From NCBI GenBank assembly GCA_002269645.1, contig NIVC01003413.1, forward strand, positions 35,245-99,244: 64,000 nt of DNA, written 5' to 3'. The notes below the pieces were generated by a model. The model had not been told where the DNA came from and ran no database searches. It worked only from the letters and a program-made list of their open reading frames with translations. This document shows positions 1-48,099 of this stretch, in pieces. The first letter of the stretch is position 1, and each line of letters opens with the position of its first letter. The DNA comes from Macrostomum lignano (lineage: Eukaryota). Position numbers and translations under genes: made by a program.

Positions 1-3000
1 AGCTCGCCCCTGACGCTGCCGATCCGACGTCCGTCGCTGCTGAAGACGTCGAGGTCGTCCGAGCTTTCGTTGCGGATCACCGACACGGCCAGCCCGTTGA
101 GGCCGGACTTCAGCGCGACGCCGACGAAGGCCGTAGCAGCTCCACCGGTGACTGGCGCGGTGCGCGCTTGCAGCCGCAGCGTCGGTGAGTTCGGCCACCG
201 CTCGCTGGTGAGCAGGTGGTACTCGCAGTGACCGTTGAATGTGTAGCTGCGGTTCGAGAGCGTGCTCAGGTGGGGGTCGCCTCGGTTGAAGCCTGGGGAT
301 CGGAGGTTGGTTGTTTGATTTGATGCTTAGTTGCTCAGGCTTTGGTTTGATGCTTAGTTGCTTAGGTTTTGGTTTGATGCTTAGTTGCTCAGGTTTTGGT
401 TTGATGCTTAGTTGCTCAGGTTTTGGTTTGATGCTTAGTTGCTCAGGTTTTGGTTTGATGCTTAGTTGGTTAGGTTTTGGTTTGATGCTTAGTTGCTCAG
501 GTTTTGTTTTGATGCTTAGTTGCTCAGGTTTTGTTTTGATGCTTAGTTGCTCAGGTTTTTTGTTTCGGTGCTTGTAAGATACCTAAAGCTGATTAGCTGC
601 CAAAAGCTGCCATGAGTGAATAAATAAATGAATGGCTCAAAATATATGTAGTCAAGCAAAGCAGTTACCTCCAGCAGGTTGCTGGTAATCCTGGCTGGTG
701 CACACGGGTCTGACGGTAGAATAAGCGGACATCATATTGGCCGCTGAGCAGATTTTTTGGCCATGCAACTCATTTTGATACTGCTTAGACCAGAGGCTAA
801 ATCGAACACTATCAGTCCTGCCTTGCCGAAAGAAGTACATTGCGTGTCCTGTACCGTCTGAGCTGGTGCTGATGAGGTGGCCAGCTGCAAATGATTGTTT
901 TTTTAATCAATTGAGAAATACGAAATATATAATTACCTCTTCATTGCTTAGGTTGTGACTCACTGGCTGAAATGTTGAACATGATCCGTCGCAAGGCAGC
1001 TCTCACTTTCCAAAGGGCATCACTTCTACGGCACAGCTGACTGATTTCGCTGCCAGCAGCTGCCAACGACATTTTGTAGCAGCACCTGGACGACACCAAT
1101 TGACTGCACTTGTGGAGCTGGCAGGCCCAAGTTTTGTAGGGTCTACAACTGTACCATGCACAACCCCTAAGTGTGGTCGAGTAGTACCAACAAAGTCTGT
1201 ATTTCCTTTCTGCACACTTGAAGCTGCTGTTGCGAAAGCACATCCGGATGCTGTCACTGGAGCACTCAAACTCGTACGGACTGTACCGCTTGTCAAGGAC
1301 TGCTGTGCGAAAATCGAAGGGACAGTCGGAGCAGCCTGGAAAGGCAGAGCTGCTCTGGTTGGCTCTGGCGGCTGCGATCCAATTGCTGCACTTTAACGAG
1401 TCGCTTGTCTGTTGATACCAGCTGCTAAGCTGCAGCACGTGACGCCCGGGTCTTCCCGAACTTCCGGGACTTAGGTTGGGCAGCTCGGGCCAGTCTGGGC
1501 GCAGGCTGAATGGCAGCTGATTTTTAAAGAAAGCAATATCCGTGAATCCCGAGAATGCCATCAGGTTCAACGTTGGATGGCTCCAGTTGAGAATTCTCGG
1601 CACAGGCAGGTGGAAGTCGCCGTAGTTGAAAATGGCGTATGAGTGAGTCTCGTTGCGCGTTACAACTGCTTGGAACTCGATGCTCTGAAATTGCATGCAG
1701 TAAGCAATTGCGCTTGATTGAGAAAGAGCTGAAAAGCTTGATTTTGCGGTCAGCTCTCAAAAGACGAAAAAAGTGTAAATCTGTTACTTTTTGCTTCGTT
1801 TAGACTGCTTTGCACGTTAGCTTTCCTTTTAATTGCCAAATACTGCCCATTATGAGCGTTTAAGTTTGGGCTTCTAAGCAAGCAGTGTAAATTCGTGATG
1901 TTTTTTCGTTCGGACTGCGTTGTGTTATAGCTTTATCAATTATCTTCGCACTCGCAAGCATGGGCAGATCTAGTTACGAAAGAAATGCAGGCTTGACACG
2001 CTTCGCTTCGACTTTGGCTTCGCTATGAAATAACTATTGAAGCTGAATCTTTGGGATCTTATCAGTGACAGAAAATTCTAAAGTAGATGTACAGCTGTGC
2101 AAGAATATTTTGCGTCCATTGATACAGGTTTAGTAGCTGAGCTGCAAGAATCCTAGCAGATGCGCTACAAACTCTTAAATGCCGTTTCAGCCTAAGCTAC
2201 TAACTACGATATTTTCTTGGTCATTGCCAAAAAACGGAAGTGCAAAATATTTCTCTGGGAATGAGCTCTGTCACTCCGGAGAGATTTCCCCACTTACAGC
2301 ATTTGCCTTGGCTCGAGAACACAGGCCCAGGCAGAGGTCGAGCCAGCCGTTTTTCTCGTCCCAAGCTTGCCTAGAAGTGCAGTTCGAGACGCAGTCGAAT
2401 CGGTTCCCATAAGGCAGTGACGGCGTCAGAATGCGCCAAGTCACGATGAGCGCCGTCAGAGGGTTGAACTTGGACCGAATCTCCTGCTCTATGATCTGCT
2501 TGACCGCGCGCCAGTTCGAGCTAGAGCTATGGTTCCTCGAATTCAGCAGCTCGAAGGAAACCTTCGGAGTCCAATATCTTCGGTAGTAGTTGGTGGCAGG
2601 CTTAACGAACCAGTAAGGCGCCACGATGGCTCCAGTAAAGTTGATCTTCGCCGAGGTGGAGTTGTATGGTAAATACGTCAGGCGATAACCAGAGAAATTG
2701 ATTGCTCCGTATTGGCTAACCTAGGGTGTTGAGAGTATTTTTTCACATTAGGTAGACATAAAGAGATAAAAACACATCAAAGAAGTTGATTAAAGCTGCG
2801 AATTCCCGCCAGCTCAGTAGAAAAAATGTCAACTCGAAGTTACAGTTAAACTCTGTATGCAAAGTAAGATGTTGCGAAGCAGGACTCACTCGACAAGACA
2901 AGCTTTCCTGACTGCCAATCAGAAATGGAATGCTTTGTGTTGCGTTAACAGTGTGATTTAGCCGGATACGGGTGTACCAGCTGATTCGGTAGTACCGGAT

Positions 3001-3455: not shown

Positions 3456-6400
3456 CTGCAATGGTAGCATCAGCCGGATAAAGAAATAAAAAAAAACGGG
3501 TGATCAATGGAATCTACAGAGCATGCTGTAGTCGGCTTGTTAGTGCTCGTGCACTGCTGAGGGGATTGTTTGTTATCGCGTGCACATTGGGGTGAGCGTA
3601 CCCACCACACCGTTTTAGTTGAAACTCAAAATATAATGGGATGCGCAGTGAGGATGGACTCACATTTTTTTGGTTACTCAGTCTCAAGACCACGCTCTTA
3701 CACTTGTGGCAGCGATTTCAAAATGGCCAAACAAGAAAAAAATAGTTTACTGCCTCCAAAATTTAGAGGCAATTGCAATGTTAGAATGTCTCTTAGCACT
3801 TTTAATGACCTCGCCGATGACTGCGAATGGGACGATAAGAAGACGGCAAGGAAGCTGAAACTGCTGTTGACAGGCGAAGCGCATAATCTTCGTCTGGGAG
3901 CAGCCGGCGGATGTGGCAGCCAGCTACGAGCAGCTGAAGCAAAAGTTTATCGAGTGCTTCGGCAACAGCCTGAGCTGCTACAAGGCAATAGAGGAGTTGA
4001 AGAGCGAAAGCGGCAGCCAAACTCGCCTACAACCTCGCCTACTCGCCTGAGGGAGCTCGCCTACAACCTGAAGCTTCTCCACCTTCGAGCTCGCCCGAAC
4101 GACTCCGTAGGAGCTTGAAAAAAAGGATGTTCAGTTTCGCCTGATGCGCTTACCCCCATCGGCCGTGAGAGATGCGCTGCTAAAGGACAAGGACTCTGCC
4201 TCGTACTCGCTGGCATCGTCGACCGAGCTGCGCGACTTGAGCTGGAATCTGGCAAGATAGGCCACGCGACTCCGGTTGAAGCAGCTGCCGTGGCAGTCAG
4301 AGGATAAGCCCGCTCGAGCAGCAGATGCAGCAGCTGACAGCCAGTATCCAAGGAGGCTCATCCCATATTAACAGGCGTCAAGGTTGGCATCAAGTGCCAC
4401 AGCTGCTGCAAGCCAGGTCACATCGCCAGGTGGTGCCCGAAGGCTATCAGCTGTCGTTGCAGCCGGTGCTCAGGCAAGGGCCACACTGCAGCGGTGTGCC
4501 CGACTCCAGCTGGCAAGCCGCAGGGAAACTTCTGAGGGTCGGCAGCCTTGAGTCAACACCGACCCGCTCTAATGGGGCCCTTGGCGTCGCGCCCTCGGTC
4601 CTCGCGAAGGTGCGTCTCGGCAGTTTGTCAGCGCCGGCTCTGCTAGACACTGGCGCTCAAGTTTCTTTGAAGGATAAGTCCTTGTTCGACAGACTGGCCC
4701 GCCAAATCGACTCCACTAGTGTTGATGCCTTGCCGACAGCGGTTGAAGGTTCGAGGCTGCCCTGCTTCGGCCTTTCGGCAGTGGAAGTAGCAATCGGCAA
4801 GATCATCCCACTGCGTCATCGCTTCACTATAGTGGACGGCACCCAGCCTAGCCTGATCATCGGCATGGATCTCATCGACCAGATGTCAGAGGCGATGACC
4901 GTTGGCTTGAAAGAGGGTATCGTCAAGTTCGATGACACCACGGTGGCTCGGGAGGCGTAAACCACGGAGCTGCCCTCACGCAGCGAGAAGCTGGTGCGGC
5001 TTAAGGTGGATTCCACTGGCGAGCAAGGGCCATTCGAGCCGTCTGACAACTTCGTCAAGTCGACCGCCACCCTGCCTGCTCGCGTGCTGGTGGTCTCGGA
5101 CGAGTGTCGCATACCGGTTAAAATGTACATCATCGTCTTCAGTAGGACCCTCGACAAGCATCTGGTGAGACTGGAGCGCGTTTTTCAACAGCTGCGAGAT
5201 GCGGGTCTCAAACTGCACAAGGCCAACAGCGTTTCCGGCCATCGCTGGGTGCTGTACCTGGAACACCTGATCAGCTAGCAGGGTATTGCACCGGACCCCA
5301 GCAAGGTTGAGGTCATTCACATCATGCCTAGTCCAAAGTCCGTCGAAGAGGTGAAGCGGTACTTAAGCATGCTAGGATTCTACCGCCGTTTCATCGAAAG
5401 ATTCATCCAGAAGGCGAGAGTCCTGCACGAGGTAGGTGTGAAATCGAGAGACTTCGCGTGAACCAGCGACTGCGAGCGAGCTTTCAAAGAGCTTAAGGAC
5501 CAGCTGACGAATGCTCCGGTTCTGAGACAAAGCAGTTTTTGTTACTCACACACTTTTTTGGTGACTCAGTTTTAAGACAACGCTCCGAACCACATAAAAA
5601 CATCAGAACTACAAAATAACACACATCGGACCCACAAGAAAACACACATCAATTCCAAAAGAAAACACAACAGGTGTTAGCAGACACAGAAGAACACGAG
5701 TGAAAAGTTTACAAAAAAATCAGGTTTTTGAAACACCTGAAATCCGTTAATTTACTCAGCAACTGCTCACCCTGCGGCTCCTGGCAGCCAGATGTCAGGC
5801 AGATTTTCACTGAATGCTCGCACTGGGGCCCCGTGAATCCCAGATCGCACTTGCACTCTTCACGGTGATAGTAAGCTGCAATGGTGACGAGTGGGTGAGT
5901 GAGTGAGTGAGTAAGTCAGTCAGTCAGTCAGTCAGTCAGTCAGTCAGTCAGTCAGTCATTCAGTGAGTCAGTCAGTCAGTTAGTCAGTCAGTCAGTCAGT
6001 TAGTCAGTCAGTCAGTCAGTTAGTCAGTCAGTTAGTCAGTCAGTCACCCACTCACTCAAGTCAGTCAGTCAGTCAGTCAGTCAGTCACCCACTCACTCAA
6101 GTCAGTCAGTCAGTCACCTACTCACTCAAGTCAGTCAGTCAGTCAGTCAGTCAGTCAGTCAGTCAGTCAGTCAGTCATTCAGTGAGTCAGTCAGTCAGTT
6201 AGTCAGTCAGTCAGTCAGTTAGTCAGTCAGTTAGTCAGTAAGTCACCCACTCACTCAAGTCAGTCAGTCAGTCAGTCAGTCACCCACTCACTCAAGTCAG
6301 TCAGTCAGTCACCTACTCACTCAAGTCAGTCAGTCAGTCAGTCAGTCAGTCAGTCAGTCAGTCAGTCAGTCAGTCAGTCAGTCAGTCAGTCAGTCAGTCA

Positions 6401-9400
6401 GTCAGTCATTCAGTGAGTCAGTCAGTCAGTCACCCACTCACTCAAGTCAGTCAGTCAGTCACCTACTCACTCAAGTCAGTCAGTCAGTCAGTCAGTCACC
6501 CACTCACTCAAGTCAGTCAGTCAGTCACCTACTCACTCAAGTCAGTCAGTTAGTCAGTCAGTCACCCACTCACTCAAGTCAGTCAGTCAGTCAGTCAGTC
6601 ACCCACTCACTCAAGTCAGTCAGTCAGTCACCTACTCACTCAAGTCAGTCAGTCAGTCAGTCAGTCAGTCAGTCAGTCAGTCAGTCAGTCAGTCAGTCAG
6701 TCAGTCAGTCAGTCAGTCAGTCACCCACTCACTCAAATCAGTCAGTCAGTCACCCACTCACTCAAGTCAGTCAGTCAGTCAGTCAGTCAGTCAGTCAGTC
6801 AGTCAGTCAGTCAGTCAGTCAGTCAGTTAGTCAGTCAGTCAGTCAGTCAGTCAGTCAGTCAGTCAGTCAGTCAGTCACCCACTCACTCAAATCAGTCAGT
6901 CAGTCAGTCAGTCAGTCAGTCAGTCAGTCAGTCAGTCAGTCAGTCAGTCAGTCAGTCAGTCAGTCAGTCAGTCAGTCAGTCAGTCAGTCAGTCAGTCAGT
7001 CAGTCAGTCAGTCAGTCAGTCAGTCAGTCAGTCAGTCAGTCAGTCAGTCAGTCAGTCAGTCAGTCAGTCAGTCAGTCAGTCAGTCAGTCAGTCAGTCAGT
7101 CAGTCAGTCAGTCAGTCAGTCAGTCAGTCAGTCAGTCAGTCAGTCAGTCAGTCAGTCAGTCAGTCAGTCAGTCAGTCAGTCAGTCAGTCAGTCAGTCAGT
7201 CAGTCAGTCAGTCAGTCAGTCAGTCAGTCAGTCAGTCAGTCAGTCAGTCAGTCAGTCAGTCAGTCAGTCAGTCAGTCAGTCAGTCAGTCAGTCAGTCAGT
7301 CAGTCAGTCACCCACTCACTCAAATCAGTCAGTCAGTCACCCACTCACTCAAGTCAGTCAGTCAGTCAGTCAGTCAGTCAGTCAGTCAGTCACCAACTCA
7401 CTCAAGTCAGTCAGTCAGTCAGTCAGTCAGTCAGTCAGTCAGTCACCAACTCACTCAAGTCAGTCAGTCAGTCACCCACTCACTCAAGTCAGTCAGTCAG
7501 TCAGTCAGTCAGTCAGTCAGTTAGTCAGTCAGTCAGTCAGTCAGTCAGTCAGTCAGTCAGTCAGTCAGTCAGTCACCAACTCACTCAAGTCAGTCAGTCA
7601 GTCACCCACTCACTCAAGTCAGTCAGTCAGTCAGTCAGTCAGTCAGTCAGTCAGTCAGTCAGTCAGTCAATCAGTCAGTCAGTCAGTCAGTCAGTCAGTC
7701 AGTCAGTCAGTCAGCTACTCACCCGTTTCGTCAGCCATGCCGCAGTCAGGGCAGCAGCGGCCCCTGCTCCCGCAGTCGCACACCACAATCCTGGGAGTCC
7801 ACACCGTGACGGCTCCGACCTCGTCCACCGCCGCCAGCTGCAGTTTGATGTCGCCTCGCCAGTTGTCGACGGGCTGCCACACGAGCTGCCAGCTGCCGCT
7901 GGCTCCAGCCTCCAGCTTCGCGGTCCCCCCGACGGCCTCCAGCACGGTGACATTCGGTGAGGCGCCGTCGGGATCCGTGACGGAGAAGGTGACATTGACG
8001 CTATTGTTGCCGCTCACTCGCAGCTGGGTCGGGGCGCTCACGAACTGCGGTGGTCGGTTGGCCAGGACGACCCGGGTTCGAGTCTCGTCTCGAATGGCGA
8101 CGGCCGCGTCTTGAGCGGCTGCGACCGAGCGAAGCTGAGCGGCGTCGAACATGCAGGTGAGGTAGGAGGAGCCGGAGCTGCGGCACACCTGCCAGGGTAC
8201 AGCAGGGGGTCGATGCACGATTTTTTACGGACTGTTCAATAAGTTTTTGTGAGTGATTTTCCTGATTGTAAAAATCCGGTAGTGAGGCGCTAGAAACAAC
8301 TTTTGAAATAAAGAAGTGGGTCGAGAATGGTTCTCAATGGAGCTAACCTTTTCATTTATTCTGCAATTCATTGGAGTCATGTCACGGCGAACTAGATTTC
8401 AGTACTATTTTTACCAGATTTTTATTTCGCTAGAAAAATGAGATCGTGACGCCTTTGCACGAATCTTTTCGGAAGCTATCAGGAATCTTCTCAGGTCAGC
8501 CAACCCCAATAATCCACATTAGGTCCCATGTGTTGCATTATGAGCCTTTTAGCTCGTAGATAAGGCAATCCCTTGTAGCAACTTTTCTTTCTATGGACCA
8601 AATATATATGACAGGCATTAAGCCCCGTGCCCACCGGGGACAAACCTCATTATCGTTCAAATGGCATGAGCCACAACATGGCTTCGAAAGCGGCGGAATA
8701 AGAAGCCCGAATTTAAAACGAAGTGGGCAGAAGACAAAACATTCTGTTGCAATGGCGCCCAAGATACACCTGCGGAACGCGCCACAGTTCGACAGTGAAA
8801 GCCAGATGACTTTATTCCCACAGTGGAAGCTTATGTGGGAGAATTTCAAGGAACTGTCTGGATAAAACGAAATTCAAGATGACGTAAAGAAAAATAAATA
8901 TAGCCTCTTCGCACTGCGCGCATGTCTAAACATCATCGCCAGCATGCACCATCGCCTTAACCGGACTGCTGTCCACAATTACGGGCTGGCGAATGTGGGA
9001 CGAGGACTTGCTCTCGGAACACCGTTTTATCCGCTTTTGCATTGAGCCGACCAAGCAAAAGCCTAAGGTCGCTTGGAGTCGGAACGTCAAGAAAACCGAT
9101 TGGGCCGTCTTTAGCTCGTAGCTGAGCCACGGCCTTCGGGATCTTGACCTCCCCAGTAACCTTTCTGACTGCCGGGTTGTGGATGATCTCGCCTGCTCCC
9201 TGGGTGGGGCGATCACCACTGCCTATGAGGCAGCCTGCTTTCTAAAGGCCTGCAAAGCTCTAAAGGCCTACAAAGGCAAGAAATCTGCTCCCTGGTGGAA
9301 CCCAGAACCCTGGAAAGAGCGACTACCAATCTTTGAAGGCCTTCAGCCCCATCAGCCTCACCTCTTGCTGCCTTGAGCTCCTCGAAAAACTGGTACTTTG

Positions 9401-15400: not shown

Positions 15401-17402
15401 TCGAAGTTACAGTTCAACTTTGTACGCAAAGCCAGATGTTGCAGAGCAGGACTCACTCGAAAAGACAAACTTTCCTGACTGCCAATCAGAAAAGGAGCAC
15501 CACGTGGTGCGGAAATGGAGCGTCTGTCGCCGTACCAGATACGGGTGTACGAACTCATTCGGTAGTACCGGATACGGGTTGCATTTACTGTCGATAGGAT
15601 CATGTGAGCTGAAAAATGCATCCGGGATTGAGAAAACTCGAGTGACTTTAGCCAAATATAAATACAAATATATCACGTCAACTCACGATAACAGACAGTC
15701 CCGTTGCCATAGTAACCCGGCTTGCAAATGCAATCAAATGAACCGATCAGGTTGATGCAGTCGGCATGAGCATCGCATTTGGAGCTGCTGAGACACTCGT
15801 CAACGTCTTTAATTGGGTTCAGTTTATGGCCGTTCAAATACAAGCTCAAGTTTAGTTATAAGTAGCCGCATTTATTTAAAAGTTAGTAAAATAGAAGGTA
15901 GAGTAGCTCGCTTAATAAATAGGAATAAAATGAATGAGAGAACAAACATTAACTCGTTTTTTTACTTTAATTCAATTGCCAATGCATTTCGACCCTCGTA
16001 GGTCATCGTCAGGGCAGTAGTGAAATTGAAAATTCTAATAAACAGTTGAATAAATATACCTGTGATAAGTTGAATACACAATATAAATTATTGTACGTAG
16101 TTTTCAATCGAAACAAGTTAACACACGGTGCAGTAGCGTACACTCAAAGCTAAAACACGCTGAGTATGTCCCAGTATGTCTGCAACTTGAAGTCTCGTGT
16201 CCCTCGGCCTCTCAATGCAGGTGTCGTTTATAAATTTCATTGCTCTGGCGACCAGAGTATTTCGTACATCGGAAAAACTAAGCCACACTTGTACACTAGG
16301 GTCAAGGAGCACTGGACCAAAAGATCTGCTGTACAGGAGCATCTTCTCACATGCAACTCATGCTGTAACAACAAACCGATTGATTTATTTAAGATTATCG
16401 ATTCTTGCCGCCATGAGCACACTTTGAATATCTTAGAGGCTATGTACATCAAAGATCAGAACCCGAGCCTAAACTGCCAGCTAGCTATGGGGGGGTGCCA
16501 GCCGCCAACTCAGCGTGTTTTAGCTTGGAGTGTACGCTACTGCACCGTGTGTTAACTTGTTTCGATTGAAAACTACGTAATAATTTATATTGTGTATTCA
16601 ACTTATCACAGGTATATTTATTCAACTGTTTATTAGAATTTTCAATTTCACTACTGCCCTGACGATAACCTACAAGGGTCGAAATGCATTGGCAATTGAA
16701 TAAAAGTAAAAAAACGAGTTAATGTTTGTTCTCTAATTAAAGTCGAAGGTTTTCACTTACCGGTGCAATTATCTGTTCCGTTGCCTTGAAACCCATCGAT
16801 GCAGGTGCAGTTGTACGACCCCGGCGTGTCGGTGCAGGTAGCGTACAGACCGCAAGGCTTCGAATCGCATTTGCTCACGTCTGCAATGGTAGGTCGTTAC
16901 AGCAGATACGGATAACGAAATAAAGGAAAACGGGTGATCAATGGAATCAACAAAACATCACATCAACCTCACACTAGCACACACATCAGATCCACAACAA
17001 AACACATACACATCGGAAAAACAAGAATACACACATAAGACCCGCAAGCTCAAAACACAGATTAAAATGCAACCACCAGAAACAATAACACGAGAGGAAA
17101 GTTTACGGCAATAAATTTCAGATTGTGTGAATCTACTGCAATCCGGTAATCTACTGCGCAACTGCTCACCTTGCGGCTCCTGGCAGTCAGATATCAGACA
17201 GACATTCACTGACTGCTCGCATTGGGGTCCTGTAAATCCCAGATCGCACTTGCACTCTTCACGGTGATAGTAAGCTGCAATGGTGACGAGTGGGTGCGTG
17301 AGTGAGTGAGTGAGTGAGTGAGTGAGTGAGTGAGTGAGTAAGTGAGTGAGTGAGTGAGTCAGTCAGTCAGTCAGTCAGTCACCCACTCACTCCAGTCAGT
17401 CA

Positions 17403-17445
<43 letters not shown>

Positions 17446-17447
17446 TA

Positions 17448-17486
<39 letters not shown>

Positions 17487-17736
17487 CCCACTCACTCAAA
17501 TCAGTCAGTCAGTCAGTCAGTCAGTCAGTCAGTCAGTCAGTCATCCACTCACTCAAATCAGTCAGTCAGTCACCCACTCACTCAAGTCAGTCAGTCAGTC
17601 AGTCAGTCAGTCAGTCAGTCAGTCACCAACTCACTCAAGTCAGTCAGTCAGTCAGTCAGTCAGTCAGTCAGTCAGTCAGTCACCAACTCACTCAAGTCAG
17701 TCAGTCAGTCACCCACTCACTCCAGTCAGTCAGTCA

Positions 17737-17779
<43 letters not shown>

Positions 17780-17781
17780 TA

Positions 17782-17824
<43 letters not shown>

Positions 17825-18276: not shown

Positions 18277-18310
<34 letters not shown>

Positions 18311-41100: not shown

Positions 41101-44100
41101 GCGCTGGAATGGCTTATTCAGCATGCCAGTGAAGTATGAGACAGACCAGGCGCATGGGCTAAGGTCTGCGATGCTTCACGCCTGCCCTTATTTTCTGCAG
41201 GTCAAGTCTGGTGGGAGGTCTGCAACCTCTATTTTCCTCTGGCAACTGCAGACCCCCTCACGCTGTCTTGCAAGTCGACCCAGGGTACTCGTCCCCGCTT
41301 GTGTTCAAGGCAGATCCTAAGGCTGCTGGACAGACTGGGCTCCGGCGCTAGGGACCTATCTAGTGGCTTTTGCCGAACTTAGGTATGCGGGTCTGGCTCG
41401 CCAGTCCGCAGGCCGTGGTACTGCTCAACGTACCCTCTAATGCCTAAGGTGTTCGACCGTGCCGATGGGCTGGAAGGCCGAGGAGTAGTTGGGTCGCAAG
41501 CAGTTCCCCTCCTTCTTGTGTCGGACCAGCCTTGAGGGTTCTTTTGGCCTACTGCCCGGTCAGGTGGAGTGGCCGTGTGGGTACCGCGCCCCTTCGAGGG
41601 TAGCCCACCAACCTTTATCATGGCCTTCGAGCCGACTATGGATAAGCTAAATATATCTAGGGACAGGGACCCTTCTAAACCCCAACCTCAGTCCGAAGGA
41701 CCGGCCGGCCCTGCTGGCAGATCCCAACCGACTGATTCAAATGTGGCAAAGGAAGGACCGGCTGGCCCTGCTGGCAGATCCCAACCGACTGATTCAAATG
41801 TGGCAAAGGAAGGACCGGCTGGCCCTGCTGGCAGATCGGACCAGAGCTACCAAACTCAAAGTACCCAAAGACCTGCCAGCTCTGCTGATGAATCTAAGGG
41901 AACCGCGAGCTCTGAGCCTAAAAAACCGGCCAAATCTGGCAGATCCGATGAAGCTCAGCGGGTTCAGCTCGAGCGCAAATGCGCTAAGCAACGCGCCAAA
42001 AGGCAGGCCTAGAAGGGAGCTCCGGGGGCCAAAGCGGCGGCGTCCACGAAGGATACTGAAGCGACTGGCGTCCCAAGGGAACCAGACGGGCCGGCCGGTG
42101 GAAGCTCTAGAAGTTCAGCGGCGGCGCTCCCTGGAGATTCTGCTGCGGCTGCTGAGGCCGAAACCACGGCGCAACAAATGGCCACTGCCAACAAGGTTTC
42201 TTCGGGAGCTACCTTTGCGGCGAAGTCCAAGGCCAAAATCCCGGCAGTGATCGTTCAAGGTCGCGACCAGGACTGGACCAGTGGTCAGCTTCAAAAAGTG
42301 TGGAGTGCTATTGACTCCTATCTGATTGAGCTGACTGTCGAGGAGGGAATCTCCATCGGCATTGAGCGGATGGTGCTGCGAAGCACATTCGTTCTTATTG
42401 CTCCTAGCAGTGAGGAGGACGCTCAGCAGCTGCTCCAGCGCCTGCCGACGGTCAACTTGGATGCTGACCTTGGCGGAGCTCTTTTTCTTCGCGAAGGCCA
42501 GCGTCCAAAGATAATACCCTATCAGGTCTTTGTCCCTGCTAGGAGCACCGCAGCTGGACCAGACGTTATCTGCCGGGTCCTACTACGCCTGAATCCCGAC
42601 CTCCCTGCTAGTGGACTGGTGCATCACTGCAAAGTGCGCAGGGGGAGACGGACAATTCAATTGTCCTCGGCCTTTCCAACGCTTGGGCGAGTCGGTACCC
42701 TAATGGAACCTCCTTCCAACTGGGTGCCCTCAAGCTCAAGATGCGCCGAGGAAAGTCTGCCAAAGGGAAGGCTACTGCCAACCCCAGCATCTCCGATAAG
42801 AGCGGGGCGCAGTCTAAGGCCCAAGGAAAGGCGCAAGCCGATCCCAAAGCCGAAGCTGCGTCTTGCCCCTCTGCTAGCAGCAGTTCGACGACCACGTTGA
42901 CGGCTCCGGCCAAGCCCCGGGAACCAAATCTGCCAGCCGGAGAAGGAGTTGAGGACGAGGCCGGGTCTTCGGAATTCGAGCTCTCCTCGGCCACCATGGT
43001 GGGGTCTGAAGGCAAAGATGCAGATAAGGAAACTTCCTCCATCCTGTCATCGGAGCCCGAGGATTCTGCTGGGGTGTGGGGGGGCGGTGGGGGTGAGAAG
43101 GCCATGAACGTCGACTAACTCCCATCTCCCAGTCAAGCCCCAGCGGCCTGGAACGAGGACGATTTGCTGTCCAAGTCTCCTTGATGGCCCGGGGTTCGAG
43201 CCAGTCTTGCATTTAGTACAGTATTGGCTAAACTCCACGCTGCTAAAGGAGCGACATTCTGTCTGAAAATAAATTTACAGCATTGCGTATCTGCGTCAGT
43301 AAATCTGATGAAGATTGCTGAGCTGTACAGGCCAGGCCTTATCCTGATCCAGGAACCCTGGATGCTCAACGGTAAGTTTCCCAACATTCCTTGTGGCTAC
43401 TCTGATTTTATGTGGCCCGGGGAACCGCCGCCAGCTAGAGCGGCTATCCTCGCTGTCAGTCATCTCCAGGCTTGGCTGAGGACTGATCTCTCTGATGGAG
43501 ACCTCTGTGTCCTCCAATCTAATCATCTCTCTCCACGTCTCAGGCGACAGAGACCCTGCTCCCGAGAGTCTACTGCGCTTTGCGCAGTACTGCGAGTCCC
43601 AGAACGCTTGAGCTGTGCTTAGGGGGCGACCTCAACACACACCATAAGCACTGGGGCAGCAAAGACACCAATACTAGAGGGGAGAAGCTTCAGGCCCTCA
43701 TCTCTAACACAAACCTCATGCTCTGCAATCGCGGTAGCACTCCTACCTTTAACAATGGCAGATGGTCCGAGGTCCTCGACGCCACACTCGTTATCCCAAG
43801 ACTCTTTGACAGAGTTAAGGAGTGGAGAATCTGGTCTGAGGAGCCCTCCCTGTCTGACTACTGCTTTATCACCTTTAACATCGCGGAAACTAAACCCCAG
43901 TCCTCGATCACTTGAAGGCGCAATATCCGCAACACCGATTGGGCGGCCTATAAGGCTACCATTGATCTGCACCTGCATATCTGCAATCTGCACTCACGGA
44001 TTTACGTCCGATTACGAACGGGCAGTACTGGGTGACGGTTACGCCTTGGTTCTTTTTCTTGACATTGTTGGCGCCTTCGACAACGTTATCTTTAAAGCGT

Positions 44101-47100
44101 TTCAGAGGGCCCTTCAAAATCGCAAAGCTCATGCTAACCTTATACGATGGATCATGTACAGGATCTCCAACCGTACGGTCACAGCCTAACTCCTAGAGCA
44201 AACTGCCTCATGTACATGATCTCCAACCGTACGGTCACTGCCTAACTCCTAGGGCAAACTGCCTCCGCCAGAGTCTGTATGGGTGGGCCCCAAGGCGGAG
44301 TCCTCACCTCGACGCTCTGGAACCTGGTCATGGACGATCTTCTCCCGACCTGATCCCATCTTCATAGTCGGGTAGGCTGACGACGTCACGGCCATTGTAG
44401 CAGGGCCGTCTCCCAGCACGCTCAGGGATCTGATGCAGAGTTTTATCCGCAAAGCAGAATCCTGGGCCAATGACAACGGTCTGGAACTCTCCGAGCCCAA
44501 AACTGTTGCCATTATGTTCACCAGTAGAATACGCTGGAACATGCGTCCTCTGCAGCTTTACGGCAGAGATATCGCCTTCGCGCACCAGACCAGATGTCTC
44601 GGGGTCATACTATACCACCGGCTCAACTGGTCCTTCCACGTGCAAGCAAAAGCCAAGCGCGCCTCAGGCATCCTGGCCCAGCTTCGAGGAGCACTTGGCA
44701 CTTCTTGGGGTTTATCCCCAAGCGGCTTTGGTGGATCTAACTTCCGTAGTTAGACCTGCCGTTACGTACGCCTCTGTTGTCTGGGTTAGCGCTACCCAGA
44801 TCAAAAGCCATGCAGATTTGCTCAACACGATCCAAGGCAGAGCGTGTAGGCTTATCTGCAACGCCACCAGGTCCACGCCCTTTGCTGGCTCGGGGGCCTT
44901 TCTTCATCTACCGCCTCTTGACCTCTTCGTCACGGGTGAGGCGGCTAGAACGACGCGGCGTCTACTTGATGTCGGTGTCAAATTCCTTTACATGAGGGTA
45001 CCTGCTAAGCGGAACCTCGTCCCGCATAGCGACCTTTGCCTCAACATTCTCAACAAGTGTCAGGCCAATCGCGTCTTCAGCGATGGCATTGCCTCAACGC
45101 TCAACATGAGACAACGCTACTCCAGCTTCATTGCTACACCGACGGTTCCAAGCAGTCAGCCAACACTGGCTTTGGTGTTGTAATCTTCCCGAACGGGAAG
45201 GTCATCGCTACCCACGCTCAGTACACTGGGGTCAACTCCAGTGTCTTCCAAAATGAAGTTCTCGCCATCAGCTCCTGCACCACAGAGCTTCTCGCCACTG
45301 GCGTAACCGGTAAGAACATTTTTTTCCATTCGGACAGCCAAGCTGCCTTGCACGCCATTAGTGGCTGCAGCACCAATTCTGCTACAGTCCTGGACTGTAT
45401 AAAACTCCTCAACATGTTGGGTTCCACCAACAAAATTACCCTAAAGTGGGTTCCGGGGCATGTTGGGATCCGAGGGTAAGAGTTGGCTGACGCCCTTGTA
45501 AAAGTTGGCGCCTCTGGCTTCTCTCTCGGTCCCGAGCCTCTCGTCCCGATTCCCGGCTGTGTCATCGACTCGCGCATCAAAGCGTGGATCAGGACTCAGC
45601 ACCGCTCGACTTGGGCGAACTACACTAACTGCAGGCAATCAAGAGGCGCTGTCTCTCAGCCCTCTCACCAGCTCCGGAAGCTCCTCTTGCGCCTCTTGCG
45701 CAGAGACATCTGGCTGCCACCATGACCCTCTCGGGCCACGGATGCTTCTCCAGGCACCAGTACCTGGTGAGCAACGCCACTAACGCCATCTGCAGTTTTT
45801 ATAACCCAGGTGACGAAACCGCTGAGCATTTCGTCAGCATCTGTCCCGCCTTTACGCGGGCCAGACTCGCTTACCTCGGGCCACACACATCTAATACCGA
45901 AGCGTGCAAAATTGAAAAATTTAACCAGCTCATGCGCTACCTCCAGGCCACCCGCAGGGCTGAACTCTCCTTTCCAGAGAGCACTATAGCTGCTGGCGAC
46001 ACTGGGGGACCTTCCTGGGCGGCGCCAACCCTTCGTCCATAGCGACGCGTCGGCCGTTCAGGGATTAGCGGAATGGGCGCCCGCGCCTTCCCGCTGTGTC
46101 CCCTCCCGGACAGCCCTGCAGCTGAGTCCAAGTTAAGTCTAAGCCATTCTGAGCATTCAAGTTTGGGCTTCTAAGCAAGCAGTGTAAATTCGTAATGTTT
46201 TTTCGTTCGAACTGCGTTGCGTGATAGTTTTATTAATTACCAAAGCATGCCAATTCTTAGCACTCCCATGCATGGGCAGATCTTTACGATAGAAATAAAA
46301 TGCAGGCCTGACACGCTTCGCTTCGACTTTTGGCTTCGCTATGAAATAACTATTGAAGCCCTAAGCAAGCTAAATCTTTGAGATCTTATCAGTGACGCGA
46401 ACTTCTAAAGTACATGTACAGCTGGCCAAGAATATTTTGCGTCAATTGATGCCGGTTTAACATTTGAGTTGCAAGAATCCTAGGAGATGCGCTACAAACT
46501 CTTAAGGCCGTTTCACTCTAAGCTACTAACTACGATATTTGCTGAGTCATCGCCAGAAAACGGAAGTGTAAATTATTTCCGTGGGAATGAGCTCCGTCAC
46601 TTCGGAGAGATTTCCCCACTTACAGCATTTGCCTTGGCTCGAGAACACAGGCCCAGGCAGAGGTCGAGCCAGCCGTTTTTCTCGTCCCAAGCTTGCCTAG
46701 AAGTGCAGTTCGAGACGCAGTCGAATCGGTTCCCATAAGGCAGTGACGGCGTCAGAATGCGCCAAGTCACGATGAGCGCCGTCAGAGGGTTGAACTTGGA
46801 TCGAACCTCCTGCTCGATGATCTGCTTGACCGCGCGCCAGTTCGACCTGGTGCTGTGTTTCCTCGAATTCAGCAGCTCGTAGGAAACCTTCGGAGTCCAA
46901 TATCTTCGGTAGTAGTTGGTGGCAGGCTTAACGAACCAGTAAGGCGCCACGACGGCTCCAGTAAAGTTGATCTTTGCCGAGTAGGAGTGGTATGGTAAAT
47001 ACCTCAAGCGATAACCAGAGAAACTGATTGCGCCGTATTGGCTAACCTAGGGTGTTGAAATTGTTATAATTTAAAGTACACAGAAAAAGTTAAATTTCAA

Positions 47101-48099
47101 TTAAAGAGTTGATTTGAGCTAAATTTCCACCTGCTCAGTAGAGAAAAATCGTCAATTCGAAGTTACAGTTCAACTCTGTATGCAAAGTCAGATGTTGCAA
47201 AGCAGGACTCACTCGAAAAGACAAGCTTTCCTGACTGCCAATCAGAAACGGAGCATCACGTGGTGCGTCACCGGGGTGACGGTACCAGATACGGTTGTAC
47301 CGGATACGGGTCGCATTTACTGTCGATAGGAGCATTTCAGCTGCAAAATACATCCGGGATTGAGACAATCGAGTAACTTCAGCCAAAGTATAAATACAAA
47401 TATATCACGTCAACTCACGATAGCAGACAGTCCCGTTGCCATAGTAACCCGGCATGCAAATGCAATCAAATGAGCCGATCAGGTTGATGCAGTCGGCATG
47501 AGCATCGCATTTGGAGCTGCTGAGACACTCGTCAACGTCTTTAATTGGATACAGTTGATGACTGATCAAATACAAGCACAAGTTTAGTTATAAGTAGCCG
47601 CATTTATTAAAAAGTTATTAAAGTCGAAGGTTTTCACTTACCGGTGCATTTATCTGTTCCGTTGTCTTGAAAGCCATCGATGCAGGTGCAGTTGTACGAC
47701 CCCGGCGTGTCCGTGCAGGTAGCGTACAGACCGCATAGCACTGAAAAAGCAGTCGTTGGTTTTTTGAGTTTTTCAACAATTGAGCGGAATTTATCAAGCA
47801 CAAAAGTAGTCGCAGGTCATGCCAATTTACTGTATCAATACAGCAAAGCATTTTTGGTTTTTGGATATACCTCAGAGTTATGGATAGTTGGAACCAAATG
47901 TTAACTTGTCTTTTCATTAATACCAACAGCTGTAGATAAAACAACGCAAATAAAGTGACAAGAGCATCAATAAGTATGATGCCATCTCACCTGTTTTGCT
48001 GTCTCTGCAGACGCTGCAACTTCCCGCACCGACAAGCAGAAACAGACACAGTAGTTGCCAGCCGAAGTCACCAGCGACTGAAGCAAAGTTCAGTCCCAT
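1..48099 (-). CDS. Giant secreted multi-module NIDO-AMOP-VWD-EGF protein (MUC4/SUSD2/Mesh-like), spliced, 3' end outside window
   Basis: 44 exons with AG/GT boundaries traced manually; phases are compatible throughout; exon lengths sum to ~14,069 nt; recognisable motifs: EGF-Ca DVDECLSSSKC, NIDO VAPYW and FQAVVTRNETHSYAIFNYG, AMOP CPFD...CCY and RPVCTSxxYQ, VWD GDPHLSTLSNxSYTFNGHCEYHL. Confidence 0.85.
317..565. repeat. 27-bp minisatellite (TGATGCTTAGTTGCTCAGGTTTTGGTT) x9, intronic
   Basis: Direct reading; ~5 copies at 12626-12770 and a single partial unit at the equivalent site in modules 1-3. Confidence 0.95.
3570..5530 (+). mobile_element. Ty3/Gypsy LTR retrotransposon fragment (gag, protease, RT C-terminus), internally deleted
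   Basis: gag-like DDCEWDDKKTARKLKLLLTGEA; aspartic protease ALLDTGAQVSL; RT tail IIVFSRTLDKHLVRLERVFQQLRDAGLKL and LGFYRRFI; stops and frameshifts; no LTRs recognised. Confidence 0.8.
5771..16880 (-). CDS. Module 4 exons
   Basis: Exons 16761-16880, 15687-15806, 15457-15608, 14870-15292, 13197-13869, 12879-13094, 11863-12599, 7723-8188, 5771-5875. Confidence 0.85.
5895..7713. repeat. (GTCA)n microsatellite array with interspersed CACCCACTCACTCAA motifs
   Basis: Direct reading; fills the intron between the Ig-like and EGF exons of module 4. Confidence 0.98.
8930..11395 (+). mobile_element. 5'-truncated, degraded R1/I-group non-LTR retrotransposon (RT + RNase H)
   Basis: [43 protein letters not shown], RNase H CYTDGS / VFQSEVLAI / FHSDSQAAL; 3' tail of AAGTC repeats ending AAGCC. 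Confidence 0.85.
11495..11826. mobile_element. hAT-type MITE (332 bp)
   Basis: Imperfect TIRs CAGGCGCGTTGCCA ... TGGCGACGCCCCTG; perfect 8-bp TSD GGCTCATC at 11487-11494 and 11827-11834. Confidence 0.85.
14414..14773 (+). mobile_element. tRNA-derived SINE
   Basis: A box TAGCCGAGCGG, B box GGCTCGATTCC, A-rich tail TAATAAAAAAG; 13-bp TSD AACTA(C/A)GATATTT; absent at the equivalent site in modules 1, 2 and 5. Confidence 0.85.
15977..16016 (-). ncRNA. Minimal type I hammerhead ribozyme (Penelope-type)
   Basis: Minus strand reads TGCC-CTGACGA-T-GACC-tacgag-GGTC-GAAA-TGCA-TT-GGCA: core, stem II, palindromic stem III loop, stem I. Confidence 0.75.
16655..16694 (+). ncRNA. Second copy of the hammerhead motif, stem II mismatched
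   Basis: TGCC-CTGACGA-TAACC-tacaag-GGTC-GAAA-TGCA-TT-GGCA. Confidence 0.6.
17170..23488 (-). CDS. Module 3 exons
   Basis: Exons 23369-23488, 23147-23266, 22950-23068, 22261-22683, 21027-21690, 20678-20893, 19816-20552, 18635-19100, 17170-17274. Confidence 0.85.
17289..18626. repeat. (GTGA)n/(GTCA)n microsatellite array
   Basis: Direct reading; equivalent intron of module 3. Confidence 0.98.
23843..23891 (-). pseudogene. Orphan 3' half of the EGF-end exon
   Basis: Encodes EQSVKVFLTTDCQEPQ with an intact GTGAG donor, but the 5' half and acceptor are replaced by foreign sequence. Confidence 0.75.
24420..25841 (+). mobile_element. Crypton-like (DUF3504-type) tyrosine recombinase, degenerate
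   Basis: KPNGELYSPSSLVCIRAGIQRF, LGERGQE, YTNHCIRVT, MTGQQSESTVRRHL; frameshifts at a T7 run (24876-24882) and at an 11-bp tandem duplication near 25540-25560. Confidence 0.75.
26155..26249. other. 95-nt imperfect palindrome / hairpin
   Basis: AATCAGCGGTC/GACCGCTGATT, GTGACAACGA/TCGTTGTCAC, TTGTCT/AGACAA and GCGCC/GGCGC pair in nested order. Confidence 0.85.
26480..27070. repeat. Degenerate ~33-bp minisatellite (TCAAGGCTCATGGAG...AATTGCTAAGATG)
   Basis: Recurrent motif; the same family occurs in reverse orientation at ~48580-48990. Confidence 0.6.
27348..28739 (+). mobile_element. THAP-domain (P-element/THAP9-like) transposase remnant
   Basis: SFHKFP...WLKSI...CSLLFTESDF THAP signature; C-terminal YYVSGF and IDRGGL motifs; fragmented, catalytic core missing. 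Confidence 0.65.
28961..37407 (-). CDS. Module 2 exons
   Basis: Exons 37288-37407, 37066-37185, 33273-33391, 32597-33007, 31417-32086, 31100-31315, 30214-30956, 29418-29883, 28961-29065; same phases as module 1. Confidence 0.85.
29081..29409. repeat. (GTCA)n microsatellite array
   Basis: Direct reading; module 2. Confidence 0.98.
33680..34060. repeat. CT-rich low-complexity tract
   Basis: Polypyrimidine sequence; a related tract lies at 35340-35820. Confidence 0.9.
34060..34860 (+). mobile_element. Degraded Penelope-like element (RT tail + GIY-YIG)
   Basis: EVNFLD...TTRVWKP RT-tail-like motif; TVYAVFDNTVYVGETANS GIY-YIG motif; frameshifted. Confidence 0.6.
35340..35820. repeat. CT-rich low-complexity tract
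   Basis: Polypyrimidine sequence sharing AGCTCATCTCTAA(T/C)ATGTACT with the 33980 tract. Confidence 0.9.
37687..47740 (-). CDS. Module 1 exons
   Basis: Exons 47642-47740 (EGF), 47419-47538 (EGF-Ca), 47213-47340 (variable), 46624-47046 (NIDO-1), 40261-40930 (NIDO-2/AMOP), 39944-40159 (AMOP end), 39058-39800 (VWD), 38262-38727 (Ig/cadherin-like), 37687-37791 (EGF end). Confidence 0.85.
37806..38253. repeat. (GTGA)n/(GTCA)n microsatellite array
   Basis: Direct reading; module 1. Confidence 0.98.
41103..46145 (+). mobile_element. Near full-length R1/I-group non-LTR retrotransposon (ORF1, APE, partial RT, RNase H, Zn knuckle), decayed
   Basis: 9-bp TSD ATTCTGAGC (41094-41102, 46146-46154); APE INLQH / LIQEPW / GGDLNTHH; RT FLDIVGAFDNV; RNase H CYTDGS; C-terminal ETAEHFVSICP; AAGT-type tail ending AAGCC. 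Confidence 0.9.
47991..48099 (-). CDS. First coding exon, signal peptide (MGLNFASVAGDFGWQLLCLFLLVGAGSCSVCRDSKT)
   Basis: ATG at 48099, hydrophobic core WQLLCLFLLVGAG, phase-1 GTGAGA donor; joining to exon 47642-47740 completes a six-Cys EGF (CRDSKTVLCGLYATC...C.C...C). Confidence 0.75.

What the first reader, a model, noticed from the sequence alone, without database searches (positions are those of the whole stretch)
1..48099. One giant secreted protein made of five or more tandem NIDO-AMOP-VWD modules
Seen: a single signal-peptide exon at the 5' end, then nine-exon modules. Each module ends on a phase-1 donor and the next starts on a phase-1 acceptor, with no stop, ATG exon or TM exon between them; about 4,690 aa lie in the window and the gene continues. 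Established: MUC4, SUSD2 and insect Mesh carry this domain cassette once. Inference: this is a concatemeric, multivalent mucin/matrix/adhesive-type protein rather than a paralog cluster. I do not know of such an architecture, but have not searched.
Basis: partly seen in the sequence, partly recalled or inferred. Interest (0 to 1): 0.82.

Follow-up and report, generated by a model that had tools for sequence, protein, structure and literature searches.

The report
Five-module MUC4-like giant flatworm gene
A flatworm (Macrostomum lignano) gene strings together at least five copies of an about 1,000-residue EGF–NIDO–VWD adhesion cassette behind one signal peptide, so it probably encodes a giant multivalent surface or matrix glycoprotein, although no transcript yet proves that all copies end up in one mRNA.

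Summary
On the minus strand, an ATG and signal-peptide exon (48099-47991) is followed by four complete nine-exon modules and a fifth that runs off the left edge. That is 44 exons, all AG/GT. Every module ends in phase 1 and the next begins in phase 1. The spliced ORF is 4,689 aa with no stop.

The organism is Macrostomum lignano. Its paralogues are single-module genes with their own signal exon and a hydrophobic terminal exon. Neither of these exons occurs between the window's modules, and two inter-module introns are only 279 and 289 nt long. So an E1-E9 block was duplicated in tandem inside one gene.

All modules are under coding constraint: dN/dS is 0.4-0.65, every exon indel is in frame, and there are no stops where about 8 per module are expected. 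Internal modules have no start codon or signal peptide, so they can only be used as part of a longer protein.

The AMOP label is only partly supported. No full-length transcript was available, and the 3' end lies outside the window.

Precedents exist but are uncharacterised. One is an uninterrupted 7,101-aa ORF with ten AMOP-VWD-Sushi modules. Others are two-module NIDO-VWD proteins in Lingula, a shark and a frog. I rate this a new variant of a known kind, of moderate interest.

The parts
47991..48099 (-). Exon 1: start codon, signal peptide and the first Cys of the first EGF; phase-1 donor
   Evidence: Read directly and modelled. It is identical to the N-terminus of UniProt model P0179 and homologous to the first exon of the single-module paralogue L001. 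It is the only such exon in the window (tblastn).
37687..47740 (-). Module 1. Exons: 47740-47642 (short EGF exon), 47538-47419, 47340-47213, 47046-46624, 40930-40261, 40159-39944, 39800-39058, 38727-38262, 37791-37687
   Evidence: Exon model, all AG/GT. Pfam on the spliced product gives EGF_3/EGF_CA, NIDO at 34.8 bits (cut-off 25) and VWD at 31.9 bits (cut-off 22.9). Residues up to exon 8 are 100% identical to P0179. The intron between exons 4 and 5 holds a 5-kb retroelement.
37408..37686 (-). Inter-module intron M1>M2, 279 nt
   Evidence: It has a GTGAGC donor and a pyrimidine-rich ...CCATTGCAG acceptor. Every ATG in it runs into a stop before exon 1 of M2. Homology to the paralogue's last intron ends about 30-100 nt in.
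28961..37407 (-). Module 2. Exons: 37407-37288, 37185-37066, 33391-33273, 33007-32597, 32086-31417, 31315-31100, 30956-30214, 29883-29418, 29065-28961
   Evidence: It is 99.6% identical to UniProt model P0004. It shares a 3.1-kb block at 98% identity with M1.
23489..28960 (-). Inter-module intron M2>M3, 5,472 nt. It contains an inserted block and a 49-nt relic of the 3' half of exon 9 (23891-23843), followed by a normal junction intron
   Evidence: The relic keeps the phase-1 GT donor but has no good in-frame acceptor.
17170..23488 (-). Module 3. Exons: 23488-23369, 23266-23147, 23068-22950, 22683-22261, 21690-21027, 20893-20678, 20552-19816, 19100-18635, 17274-17170
   Evidence: Exons 5-6 appear in UniProt model P0005.
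16881..17169 (-). Inter-module intron M3>M4, 289 nt
   Evidence: It is a diverged copy of the M1>M2 junction intron, so the junction itself was duplicated and has since diverged.
5771..16880 (-). Module 4. Exons: 16880-16761, 15806-15687, 15608-15457, 15292-14870, 13869-13197, 13094-12879, 12599-11863, 8188-7723, 5875-5771
   Evidence: Exons 1 and 7 appear in P0005, joined to exon 6 of M3.
3456..5770 (-). Inter-module intron M4>M5, 2,315 nt, with a retroelement gag-protease fragment on the + strand
1..3455 (-). Module 5, partial. Exons: 3455-3336, 3233-3114, 3035-2890, 2720-2298, 1684-964, 884-669, 292-1. The VWD exon runs off the window
   Evidence: Exon 3 is 100% identical to the start of UniProt model P0019. 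That model continues through an exon-9 tail into an exon 1 and then an exon 3 that is not in the window.
48100..48548 (-). 5' flank (promoter/5'UTR region) conserved with the single-module paralogue
   Evidence: L001 3852-4511 aligns with window 48548-47886 at 87% identity.

Best explanation
This is one protein-coding gene of Macrostomum lignano, on the minus strand. A block of nine exons (EGF, cbEGF, NIDO, a Cys-rich AMOP-like linker, VWD with a GDPH motif, an Ig-like domain, EGF) was duplicated in tandem at least four times inside the gene.

The duplicated block lies between the signal-peptide exon and a terminal membrane-anchor exon that is presumed to lie left of the window. The block begins and ends in intron phase 1, so every copy splices in frame to the next. 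The primary product is therefore a secreted or membrane-anchored glycoprotein of more than 4,689 aa with at least five cassettes.

Shown here: the exon structure, the open frame, the absence of internal start, signal or anchor exons, and selection on all copies.

Inferred: a single mRNA; an anchor like that of the paralogues (GPI-like tail); a role as a multivalent cell-surface or matrix adhesion protein; and autocatalytic Asp-Pro cleavage at the GDPH of each VWD domain, as in MUC4, SUSD2 and FCGBP. That cleavage would turn the polyprotein into a chain of fragments that remain associated.
For: - Gene model: 44 exons, all AG/GT, giving a 4,689-aa ORF.
- Junction phases are 1/1 at all four module borders.
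- There is only one signal exon, and no copy of the paralogues' terminal exon.
- The paralogues L001 (NIVC01002355.1) and L002 (NIVC01000695.1) are single-module genes with both of those exons.
- Inter-module introns are 279 and 289 nt and are diverged copies of one another.
- Modules M1-M4 are more similar to each other (84-98%) than to any paralogue (84% or less).
- Constraint: dN/dS is 0.40-0.65. Exon divergence is 7.0% against 13.6% in introns. All 37 pairwise exon indels are multiples of 3, against 55 of 170 in introns. About 7.7 stops per module are expected under neutrality and none is observed.
- Domains: NIDO, VWD and EGF score above the Pfam cut-offs. GDPH is present in 5 of 5 modules, with 21-26 N-glycosylation sequons and 34-51 Cys per module.
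- Models crossing module borders: P0019 (...EPQ|DVSKC...), P0005 (M3 to M4) and P0001.
- Precedent: P0016 is an uninterrupted 21.3-kb ORF with 10 modules.
- GDPH cleavage is established for SUSD2 (PMC6696261) and FCGBP (PMC8267560, PMC10880436).
Against: - No transcript or protein in the databases spans a complete exon 9 to exon 1 junction between two full modules.
- Existing models split the locus. P0179 and P0004 both stop inside exon 8, and P0005 and P0019 skip exons.
- dN/dS of 0.4-0.65 is only moderate constraint. Gene conversion between copies (a 98%-identical M1/M2 block) could help keep unused copies open.
- M. lignano makes polycistronic, trans-spliced transcripts (PMC5730564).
- The 3' end and the total module number are unknown.
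- The locus could not be checked in a second assembly.
Confidence: 0.7

Rival explanations
1. Only the first module, or a small and variable subset of modules, reaches mature mRNA. Transcripts would end by intronic polyadenylation after exon 9 of M1, or modules would be skipped as in-frame cassettes. M2-M5 would be mostly unused duplicates kept intact by youth and gene conversion.
For: Database models are short: P0179 covers M1 only. The models that cross modules skip exons (P0005, P0019, P0001). All module borders, and several internal exons, are phase 1/1, so skipping keeps the frame. M1 and M2 share a 98%-identical block, which suggests ongoing conversion.
Against: Module-specific in-frame indels (12, 33 and 51 nt) and roughly two-fold lower divergence in exons than in introns, in every module, indicate selection on each copy and not only copying from a live one. 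No stops are seen where about 8 per module are expected. No terminal or anchor exon follows M1.
Confidence: 0.13
2. This is a cluster of separately expressed paralogues. Each module would give its own mRNA from an internal promoter or by spliced-leader trans-splicing of a polycistronic precursor.
For: SL trans-splicing and multi-gene transcriptional units are common in M. lignano (PMC5730564). Annotators called separate models for M1, M2 and M3/M4.
Against: Internal modules have no in-frame ATG before exon 3, no signal peptide and no anchor exon, yet they encode disulphide-rich, N-glycosylated extracellular domains. From my own recollection, not checked here, the M. lignano leader ends in ATG. 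Joined to the phase-1 exon-1 acceptor it would read ATG ACG TGA. Complete paralogues elsewhere do carry signal and terminal exons.
Confidence: 0.07
3. This is an assembly artefact. Haplotypes or homeologues of a single-module gene in this hidden polyploid were chained in tandem, or the copy number was inflated.
For: The M. lignano genome is highly repetitive and partly duplicated, with 180 Mb in blocks at 95% identity or more (PMC5730564). M1 and M2 share 3.1 kb at 98% identity. I could not look the window up in a second assembly.
Against: The modules differ by dS 0.05-0.18 and carry different transposon insertions. The exon 9 to exon 1 junction intron exists in at least three diverged copies and lacks signal and terminal exons, which mis-joining of complete genes could not create. 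P0019 shows a similar junction linked to a module that is not in the window.
Confidence: 0.07

Closest known systems
MUC4 C-terminal region (NIDO-AMOP-VWD-EGF-TM), and the wider MUC4-like family seen here (e.g. P0130, P0033, P0017)
   Same: The domain order is the same: NIDO, a Cys-rich linker in the AMOP position, a VWD that starts at GDPH, then EGF. Paralogues are membrane-anchored. The closest non-Macrostomum relative, P0017 (38% identity), is a single-module protein with EGFs and a TM segment.
   Different: The cassette occurs at least five times in series instead of once. There is no mucin Ser/Thr/Pro repeat domain. The Pfam AMOP and C8-3_MUC4 models do not score. There is an extra Ig-like (Big_9-like) domain. 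Paralogues end in a GPI-like tail rather than a TM segment with a cytoplasmic tail.
Single-module paralogues in M. lignano (P0003 on NIVC01000695.1; P0008/P0187 locus on NIVC01002355.1)
   Same: They have the same nine exons, the same splice phases and 70-90% identity. The 5' flank, signal exon and short first EGF exon of L001 match M1.
   Different: They have one module (about 1,069 aa, 5.8-9 kb). After exon 9 comes an 80-nt intron and a terminal exon encoding DKGDEEDG...SLVLLSVRLN*. That exon is absent from the window.
P0016: 7,101-aa ORF on ENA contig ERZ20067936 ptg000233l (Mesh/SUSD2-like concatemer, uncharacterised)
   Same: It has ten tandem cassettes of about 700 aa, each containing AMOP-VWD(GDPH)-C8-3, followed by one TM anchor. 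This shows that concatemers of this cassette exist as single reading frames.
   Different: Its module is TIG-like/AMOP/VWD/C8-3/Sushi, with no NIDO or EGF. It is intronless. Identity is about 29%, so it is an independent expansion in another, unidentified organism.
Two-module NIDO-VWD proteins: Lingula anatina XP_023930884.1, Carcharodon carcharias XP_041070867.1, Anomaloglossus KAM4041246.1
   Same: Each has two NIDO, two VWD and two C8-3_MUC4 domains, with EGF arrays, in one predicted protein.
   Different: They have two modules, separated by long EGF arrays. They are predicted and uncharacterised, and there is no sign of recent tandem block duplication.
FCGBP (IgGFc-binding protein)
   Same: It is a large secreted protein built of repeated VWD assemblies: 13 VWD domains, 11 with GDPH. 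All GDPH sites are autocatalytically cleaved, and the fragments stay together (PMC8267560, PMC10880436). This is the best functional analogue for a chain of GDPH-bearing modules.
   Different: Its repeat unit is VWD-C8-TIL, with no NIDO, AMOP-like or EGF domains. It is not anchored. It is analogous rather than a family member.

Membership tests
MUC4-like NIDO-AMOP-VWD cassette proteins | NIDO domain | tested here: met
   Pfam PF06119 scores 34.8 bits (cut-off 25) on spliced module 1, residues 152-380. Each half exon also hits weakly on its own.
MUC4-like NIDO-AMOP-VWD cassette proteins | AMOP domain between NIDO and VWD | tested here: inconclusive
   Pfam PF03782 is not detected, even at E<=10. 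hhalign against ten genuine AMOP copies gives E=0.058 and aligns only the last 40 columns. The AF2 model is unusable, pLDDT 43. However, phmmer alignments to P0112, P0115 and P0158 run from the VWD back into the C-terminal half of their Pfam-AMOP domains. Local motifs are shared (CxCP..A..D, CF, CCY, RP..C..YQPP). My reading is a divergent AMOP-like region with insertions.
MUC4-like NIDO-AMOP-VWD cassette proteins | VWD domain beginning with the GDPH autocleavage motif | tested here: met
   PF00094 scores 31.9 bits (cut-off 22.9). GDPH is present in 5 of 5 modules. Cleavage itself was not tested.
MUC4-like NIDO-AMOP-VWD cassette proteins | C8-3_MUC4 domain after the VWD | tested here: not met
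   PF23263 is not reported at E<=0.1 for module 1 or P0003, although it is present in most distant relatives.
Mucins (sensu stricto) | Long Pro/Thr/Ser-rich O-glycosylated tandem-repeat domain | tested here: not met
   The 4,689-aa translation has none. The tandem repeats in the window are intronic microsatellites.
Mesh / SUSD2 | Sushi (CCP) domain after the VWD, and a TM anchor | tested here: not met
   There is no Sushi hit in the modules or paralogues. The modules end in an Ig-like domain plus EGF instead.
Single concatemeric transcription unit | One start/signal exon, phase-compatible module borders, and no internal start, anchor or stop | tested here: met
Single concatemeric transcription unit | RNA molecules that join exon 9 of one module to exon 1 of the next | not testable with these tools
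   There is only indirect evidence. UniProt model P0019 contains ...EPQ|DVSKCDSKPC..., and P0005 and P0001 join modules with exon skipping. Whether these models rest on RNA evidence is unknown.
Membrane-anchored (GPI/TM) surface protein | C-terminal hydrophobic anchor signal | not testable with these tools
   The 3' end is outside the window. The paralogues end in ...SIIIASVGAVTSLVLLSVRLN*.

The most novel reading that the evidence does not exclude
The gene could be a 'valency-tunable polyprotein'. All module borders, and several internal exons, are phase 1/1, so whole modules or half-modules could be skipped in frame. That would give isoforms with different numbers and combinations of cassettes; the cross-module models P0005, P0019 and P0001 would be glimpses of this.

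Autocleavage at the GDPH of every VWD domain would then convert the product into a chain of links (VWD-Ig-EGF of module n joined to EGF-EGF-NIDO-AMOP-like of module n+1). These links would be offset from the genetic modules and held together non-covalently or by disulphides. The result would be a breakable, multivalent tether at the worm's surface.
Probability: 0.2. Interest if true: 0.65.

Novelty: new variant of a known kind. Interest (0 to 1): 0.45.

Why it matters
If it is made as one chain, this would be, as far as I know, the first described protein carrying the MUC4-type NIDO-(AMOP-like)-VWD cassette five or more times.

It is also a clean, recent example of how symmetrical-phase exon blocks let a whole 1,000-residue multidomain unit be amplified inside a gene. 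Single-module paralogues in the same genome serve as natural controls.

M. lignano allows RNAi, in situ hybridisation and transgenesis. The effect of cassette number on adhesion or barrier function, and the fate of multiple GDPH cleavage sites in one chain, could therefore be tested directly.

It also flags a locus that current annotations break into fragments.

Tried and rejected
- **Terminal or signal exons between modules.** tblastn and sensitive blastn with the paralogues' N- and C-terminal exons found none.
- **Read-through of the exon-9 donor.** It gives Cys/Val/Leu-rich 'hydrophobic' tails in some junction introns. I rejected these as TM exons. They are TG-rich low-complexity sequence, differ in frame and length between modules, and are absent in M2 and M4.
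- **The extra exon-9 copy near 23.87 kb.** It is only a 49-nt relic without a usable in-frame acceptor.
- **AMOP.** The Pfam scan, profile-profile comparison, PDB sequence search (only a weak MUC5AC VWD hit) and AF2 (pLDDT 43, so no fold search) were all inconclusive.
- **Extending the gene leftwards, or finding the window's contig.** Exact look-ups of P0004, P0005, P0179, P0001, P0002, P0019 and a window ORF all returned 'not on record'.
- **Junction-spanning proteins.** A second database search with an exon 8-9-1-2-3-4 query found only P0019 and P0188.
- **Literature.** I found no paper on a Macrostomum NIDO/VWD protein.
- **Two introns of identical length** (3,674 nt, in M2 and M4). They share no sequence, so this is coincidence.
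Full report
**What is in the window.** The sequence is eukaryotic. Six-frame open segments on the minus strand between 1 and 48.1 kb recur about every 10 kb. Self-BLAST shows five co-oriented copies at 80-98% identity, interrupted by unrelated insertions. Single open frames already hit Pfam NIDO (two halves), VWD, an Ig-like fold and EGF.

**Organism and relatives.** A rough module translation found eight clusters, all from the flatworm Macrostomum lignano, at 68-87% identity, and otherwise only generic EGF proteins. Two of them map to the NIVC01 assembly (GCA_002269645.1). P0003 (1,069 aa) lies on NIVC01000695.1 as a 5.8-kb gene. P0008 lies on NIVC01002355.1.

These paralogues have one module. 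It is flanked by a signal-peptide exon and, 80 nt after the last EGF exon, by a terminal exon encoding DKGDEEDGRVDDRWSGVFKVGRSVHGEHSIIIASVGAVTSLVLLSVRLN*. That is a GPI-signal-like or very short-tailed anchor.

**Gene model.** I used the paralogue junctions as a guide to locate every exon copy and read its splice sites. The model starts with the ATG at 48099. The signal exon runs 48099-47991 and encodes MGLNFASVAGDFGWQLLCLFLLVGAGSCSVCRDSKT, ending in a phase-1 donor.

Four complete nine-exon modules follow, and a fifth reaches the left edge inside its VWD exon. That gives 44 exons. All 43 acceptors are AG and all 43 donors in the window are GT. The ORF is 4,689 aa without a stop.

The incoming phases of the nine exons are 1,1,1,0,0,1,1,0,1. 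The last exon ends in phase 1 (…CCG CAA G|gtgagc). The next module's first exon starts in phase 1 (ccattgcag|AC GTG AGC AAA TGC). The junction therefore reads …CQEPQ-D-VSKCDSKPCGLYATC….

A UniProt model for M. lignano (P0179, 892 aa) is 100% identical to residues 1-892 of my model. P0004 is 99.6% identical to module 2. My splice choices in modules 1 and 2 therefore match existing annotation.

**Domains.** On spliced module 1, Pfam gives EGF_3/EGF_CA, NIDO (34.8 bits, cut-off 25), VWD (31.9 bits, cut-off 22.9) and a weak Big_9/cadherin-like Ig fold.

AMOP is not detected even at E<=10. A profile of the 205-aa Cys-rich linker compared with ten genuine AMOP copies gave E=0.058 over the last 40 columns only. 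An AF2 model had pLDDT 43 and was not used.

On the other hand, phmmer alignments of distant relatives that do carry Pfam AMOP (P0112, P0115, P0158) extend from the VWD back into the C-terminal half of their AMOP domains. The conserved motifs also line up by eye. I call the linker AMOP-like, partly supported.

Each complete module has 46-51 Cys and 23-26 N-glycosylation sequons; the partial fifth has 34 and 21. Every module has one GDPH at the VWD start. There is no Ser/Thr/Pro repeat, so this is not a mucin in the strict sense.

**Why one gene rather than a paralogue cluster.**

1. There is only one signal exon. There is no copy of either paralogue-type terminal exon anywhere in the window.
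2. Homology to the single-module paralogue stops 30-100 nt into the intron after exon 9. The sequence then runs directly into the intron that precedes exon 1 of the next module. Two of these junction introns are only 279 and 289 nt. Three are diverged copies of the same sequence, so the junction was itself duplicated and has aged.
3. The junction introns contain no ATG that reads into exon 1 in frame. The first Met of an internal module is in exon 3 and is not followed by a hydrophobic segment.
4. M1-M4 are closer to one another (84-98% over exons 5-7) than to any paralogue (84% or less). The copies therefore arose within this locus.

**Are the internal copies used?**

- Pairwise dN/dS is 0.40-0.65, with dS 0.05-0.18.
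- Exons differ by 7.0% and alignable introns by 13.6%.
- All 37 pairwise exon indel events are multiples of three (1.5 per kb). In introns, 55 of 170 are (15.7 per kb).
- Random substitution at 6.8% (half the intron divergence between modules) would give about 7.7 stop codons per module, and 0 of 2,000 simulated modules stayed open. Even at 3.5% the chance of staying open is 0.013.
- All 34 introns within M2-M5 keep canonical dinucleotides.

Every module is thus under selection for an open, spliceable frame. These are disulphide-rich, glycosylated extracellular domains without their own signal peptide. The only coherent way to use them is downstream of exon 1.

**RNA-level evidence is thin.** No database protein joins two complete modules.

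Three UniProt models cross borders. P0005 joins M3 exon 6 to M4 exon 1 and then M4 exon 7. P0001, from another locus or assembly, joins an exon 6 to a following exon 1. P0019 starts with M5's exon 3 (100% identical). It continues through 'EPQ' (a 10-nt tail of exon 9) into DVSKCDSKPC… (exon 1). It then enters an exon 3 that is not in the window and an exon 4 identical to M4's.

P0019 thus contains the predicted exon 9 to exon 1 codon junction and implies at least one further module. I could not establish whether these models rest on RNA evidence.

The NIVC annotation is transcript-based, and M. lignano has frequent SL trans-splicing and polycistronic units (PMC5730564). This keeps the 'separate mRNAs' rival alive. 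From my own recollection, not checked here, the spliced leader ends in ATG; joined to the phase-1 exon-1 acceptor it would hit a stop at once (ATG ACG TGA).

**Assembly artefact?** The modules differ in sequence and carry different transposon insertions. The junction without signal or anchor exons exists in several diverged copies. Chaining of complete alleles could not create that. The copy number could still be wrong, and I could not retrieve the locus from a second assembly.

**Comparison with what is known.** I searched 1.84 billion representative proteins with the EGF-free core (P0006). There were 478 hits at E<=0.001, mostly single VWD matches. The informative ones were these.

- **P0017:** 38% identity, from a Logan assembly. 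It is a single-module NIDO-VWD-EGF-TM protein.
- **Two-module proteins:** Lingula XP_023930884.1, white-shark XP_041070867.1 and a dendrobatid frog protein. Each has two NIDO, two VWD and two C8-3_MUC4 domains.
- **P0016:** 7,101 aa with ten about 700-aa repeats of TIG-like/AMOP/VWD(GDPH)/C8-3/Sushi and one TM segment. It is encoded by an uninterrupted 21.3-kb ORF on an ENA contig.

Concatemers of this cassette family therefore exist, but none is characterised, and none has five or more NIDO-containing modules.

Functionally, the nearest studied analogue is FCGBP. It has 13 VWD assemblies, and all of its GDPH sites are autocleaved with the fragments retained (PMC8267560, PMC10880436). SUSD2 likewise needs GDPH cleavage and inter-fragment disulphides (PMC6696261).

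**Mechanism proposed.** Steps 1-2 are partly shown and steps 3-4 are inferred.

1. One promoter and one signal peptide drive a pre-mRNA of 48 kb or more.
2. Phase-1/1 borders give an in-frame chain of five or more cassettes.
3. The protein enters the secretory pathway and is heavily disulphide-bonded and N-glycosylated. It is probably anchored by a terminal exon like that of its paralogues.
4. Each VWD may autocleave at GDPH, giving a chain of associated fragments that acts as a long multivalent adhesion or barrier molecule.

**Verdict.** 'AMOP' and 'mucin' need qualification, and the architecture is a new variant of a known kind rather than something unprecedented.

Noticed in passing
window 48,200-64,000 (both strands): A Maverick/Polinton-like integrated element lies just upstream of the gene. 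It has a double-jelly-roll capsid-like ORF (51358-52644, -), a Pox_A32-like packaging ATPase (54471-54965, +), a PC4-domain ORF (57259-58053, +) and an rve integrase with chromodomain (58344-59444, +). It also has 47- and 54-nt tandem repeats at 56577-57072. No polymerase was seen, so the element may continue past the right edge.
   Followed up: partly
window 41,100-46,140; 8,189-11,862; 3,500-5,700: Retroelement fragments sit on the + strand inside introns of the giant gene. They include RNase H (45030-45476) in the M1 exon 4-5 intron, a related piece in the M4 exon 7-8 intron, and a gag-aspartyl protease (4280-4957) in the M4>M5 intron.
   Followed up: partly
window 5898-7714, 17301-18626, 29080-29409, 37805-38253: The intron between exons 8 and 9 of every module is filled with an (AGTC)n microsatellite of 80-450 units, plus (GAGT)n in M1. 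Its length differs about six-fold between modules.
   Followed up: no
window 23,843-23,891: This is a 49-nt relic of the 3' half of exon 9, with an intact phase-1 donor. It is followed by a complete junction intron and lies downstream of a 5-kb inserted block in the M2>M3 intron. It is a scar of the rearrangement that inserted that block.
   Followed up: partly
window 24,384-25,554 and 27,615-28,582 (+ strand): Open frames of 130-235 aa lie on the opposite strand inside the M2>M3 intron and have no significant Pfam match. Their nature (transposon or nested gene) is unknown.
   Followed up: no
window 29,079-32,213 vs 37,929-41,056: Modules 1 and 2 share 3.1 kb at 98% identity, introns included. 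The rest of these modules is about 90% identical. This points to recent gene conversion or a very recent duplication.
   Followed up: partly
window 314-559 and 12,621-12,768; L001 10,456-10,945: A 27-nt tandem repeat sits in the exon 6-7 intron of M5 and M4. The M5 copy plus the start of its VWD exon is 95% identical to the single-module paralogue L001. The 5' end of L001 resembles M1 and its exon 8 resembles M4 (95%). The paralogue is therefore a mosaic, which suggests unequal crossover or conversion between loci.
   Followed up: partly
L003 1001-22306 (ENA ERZ20067936 ptg000233l): This is an intronless 21.3-kb ORF (7,101 aa) with ten TIG-like/AMOP/VWD/C8-3/Sushi modules and a TM tail. It lies next to an IgGFc_binding-domain gene. 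The organism is not identified.
   Followed up: partly
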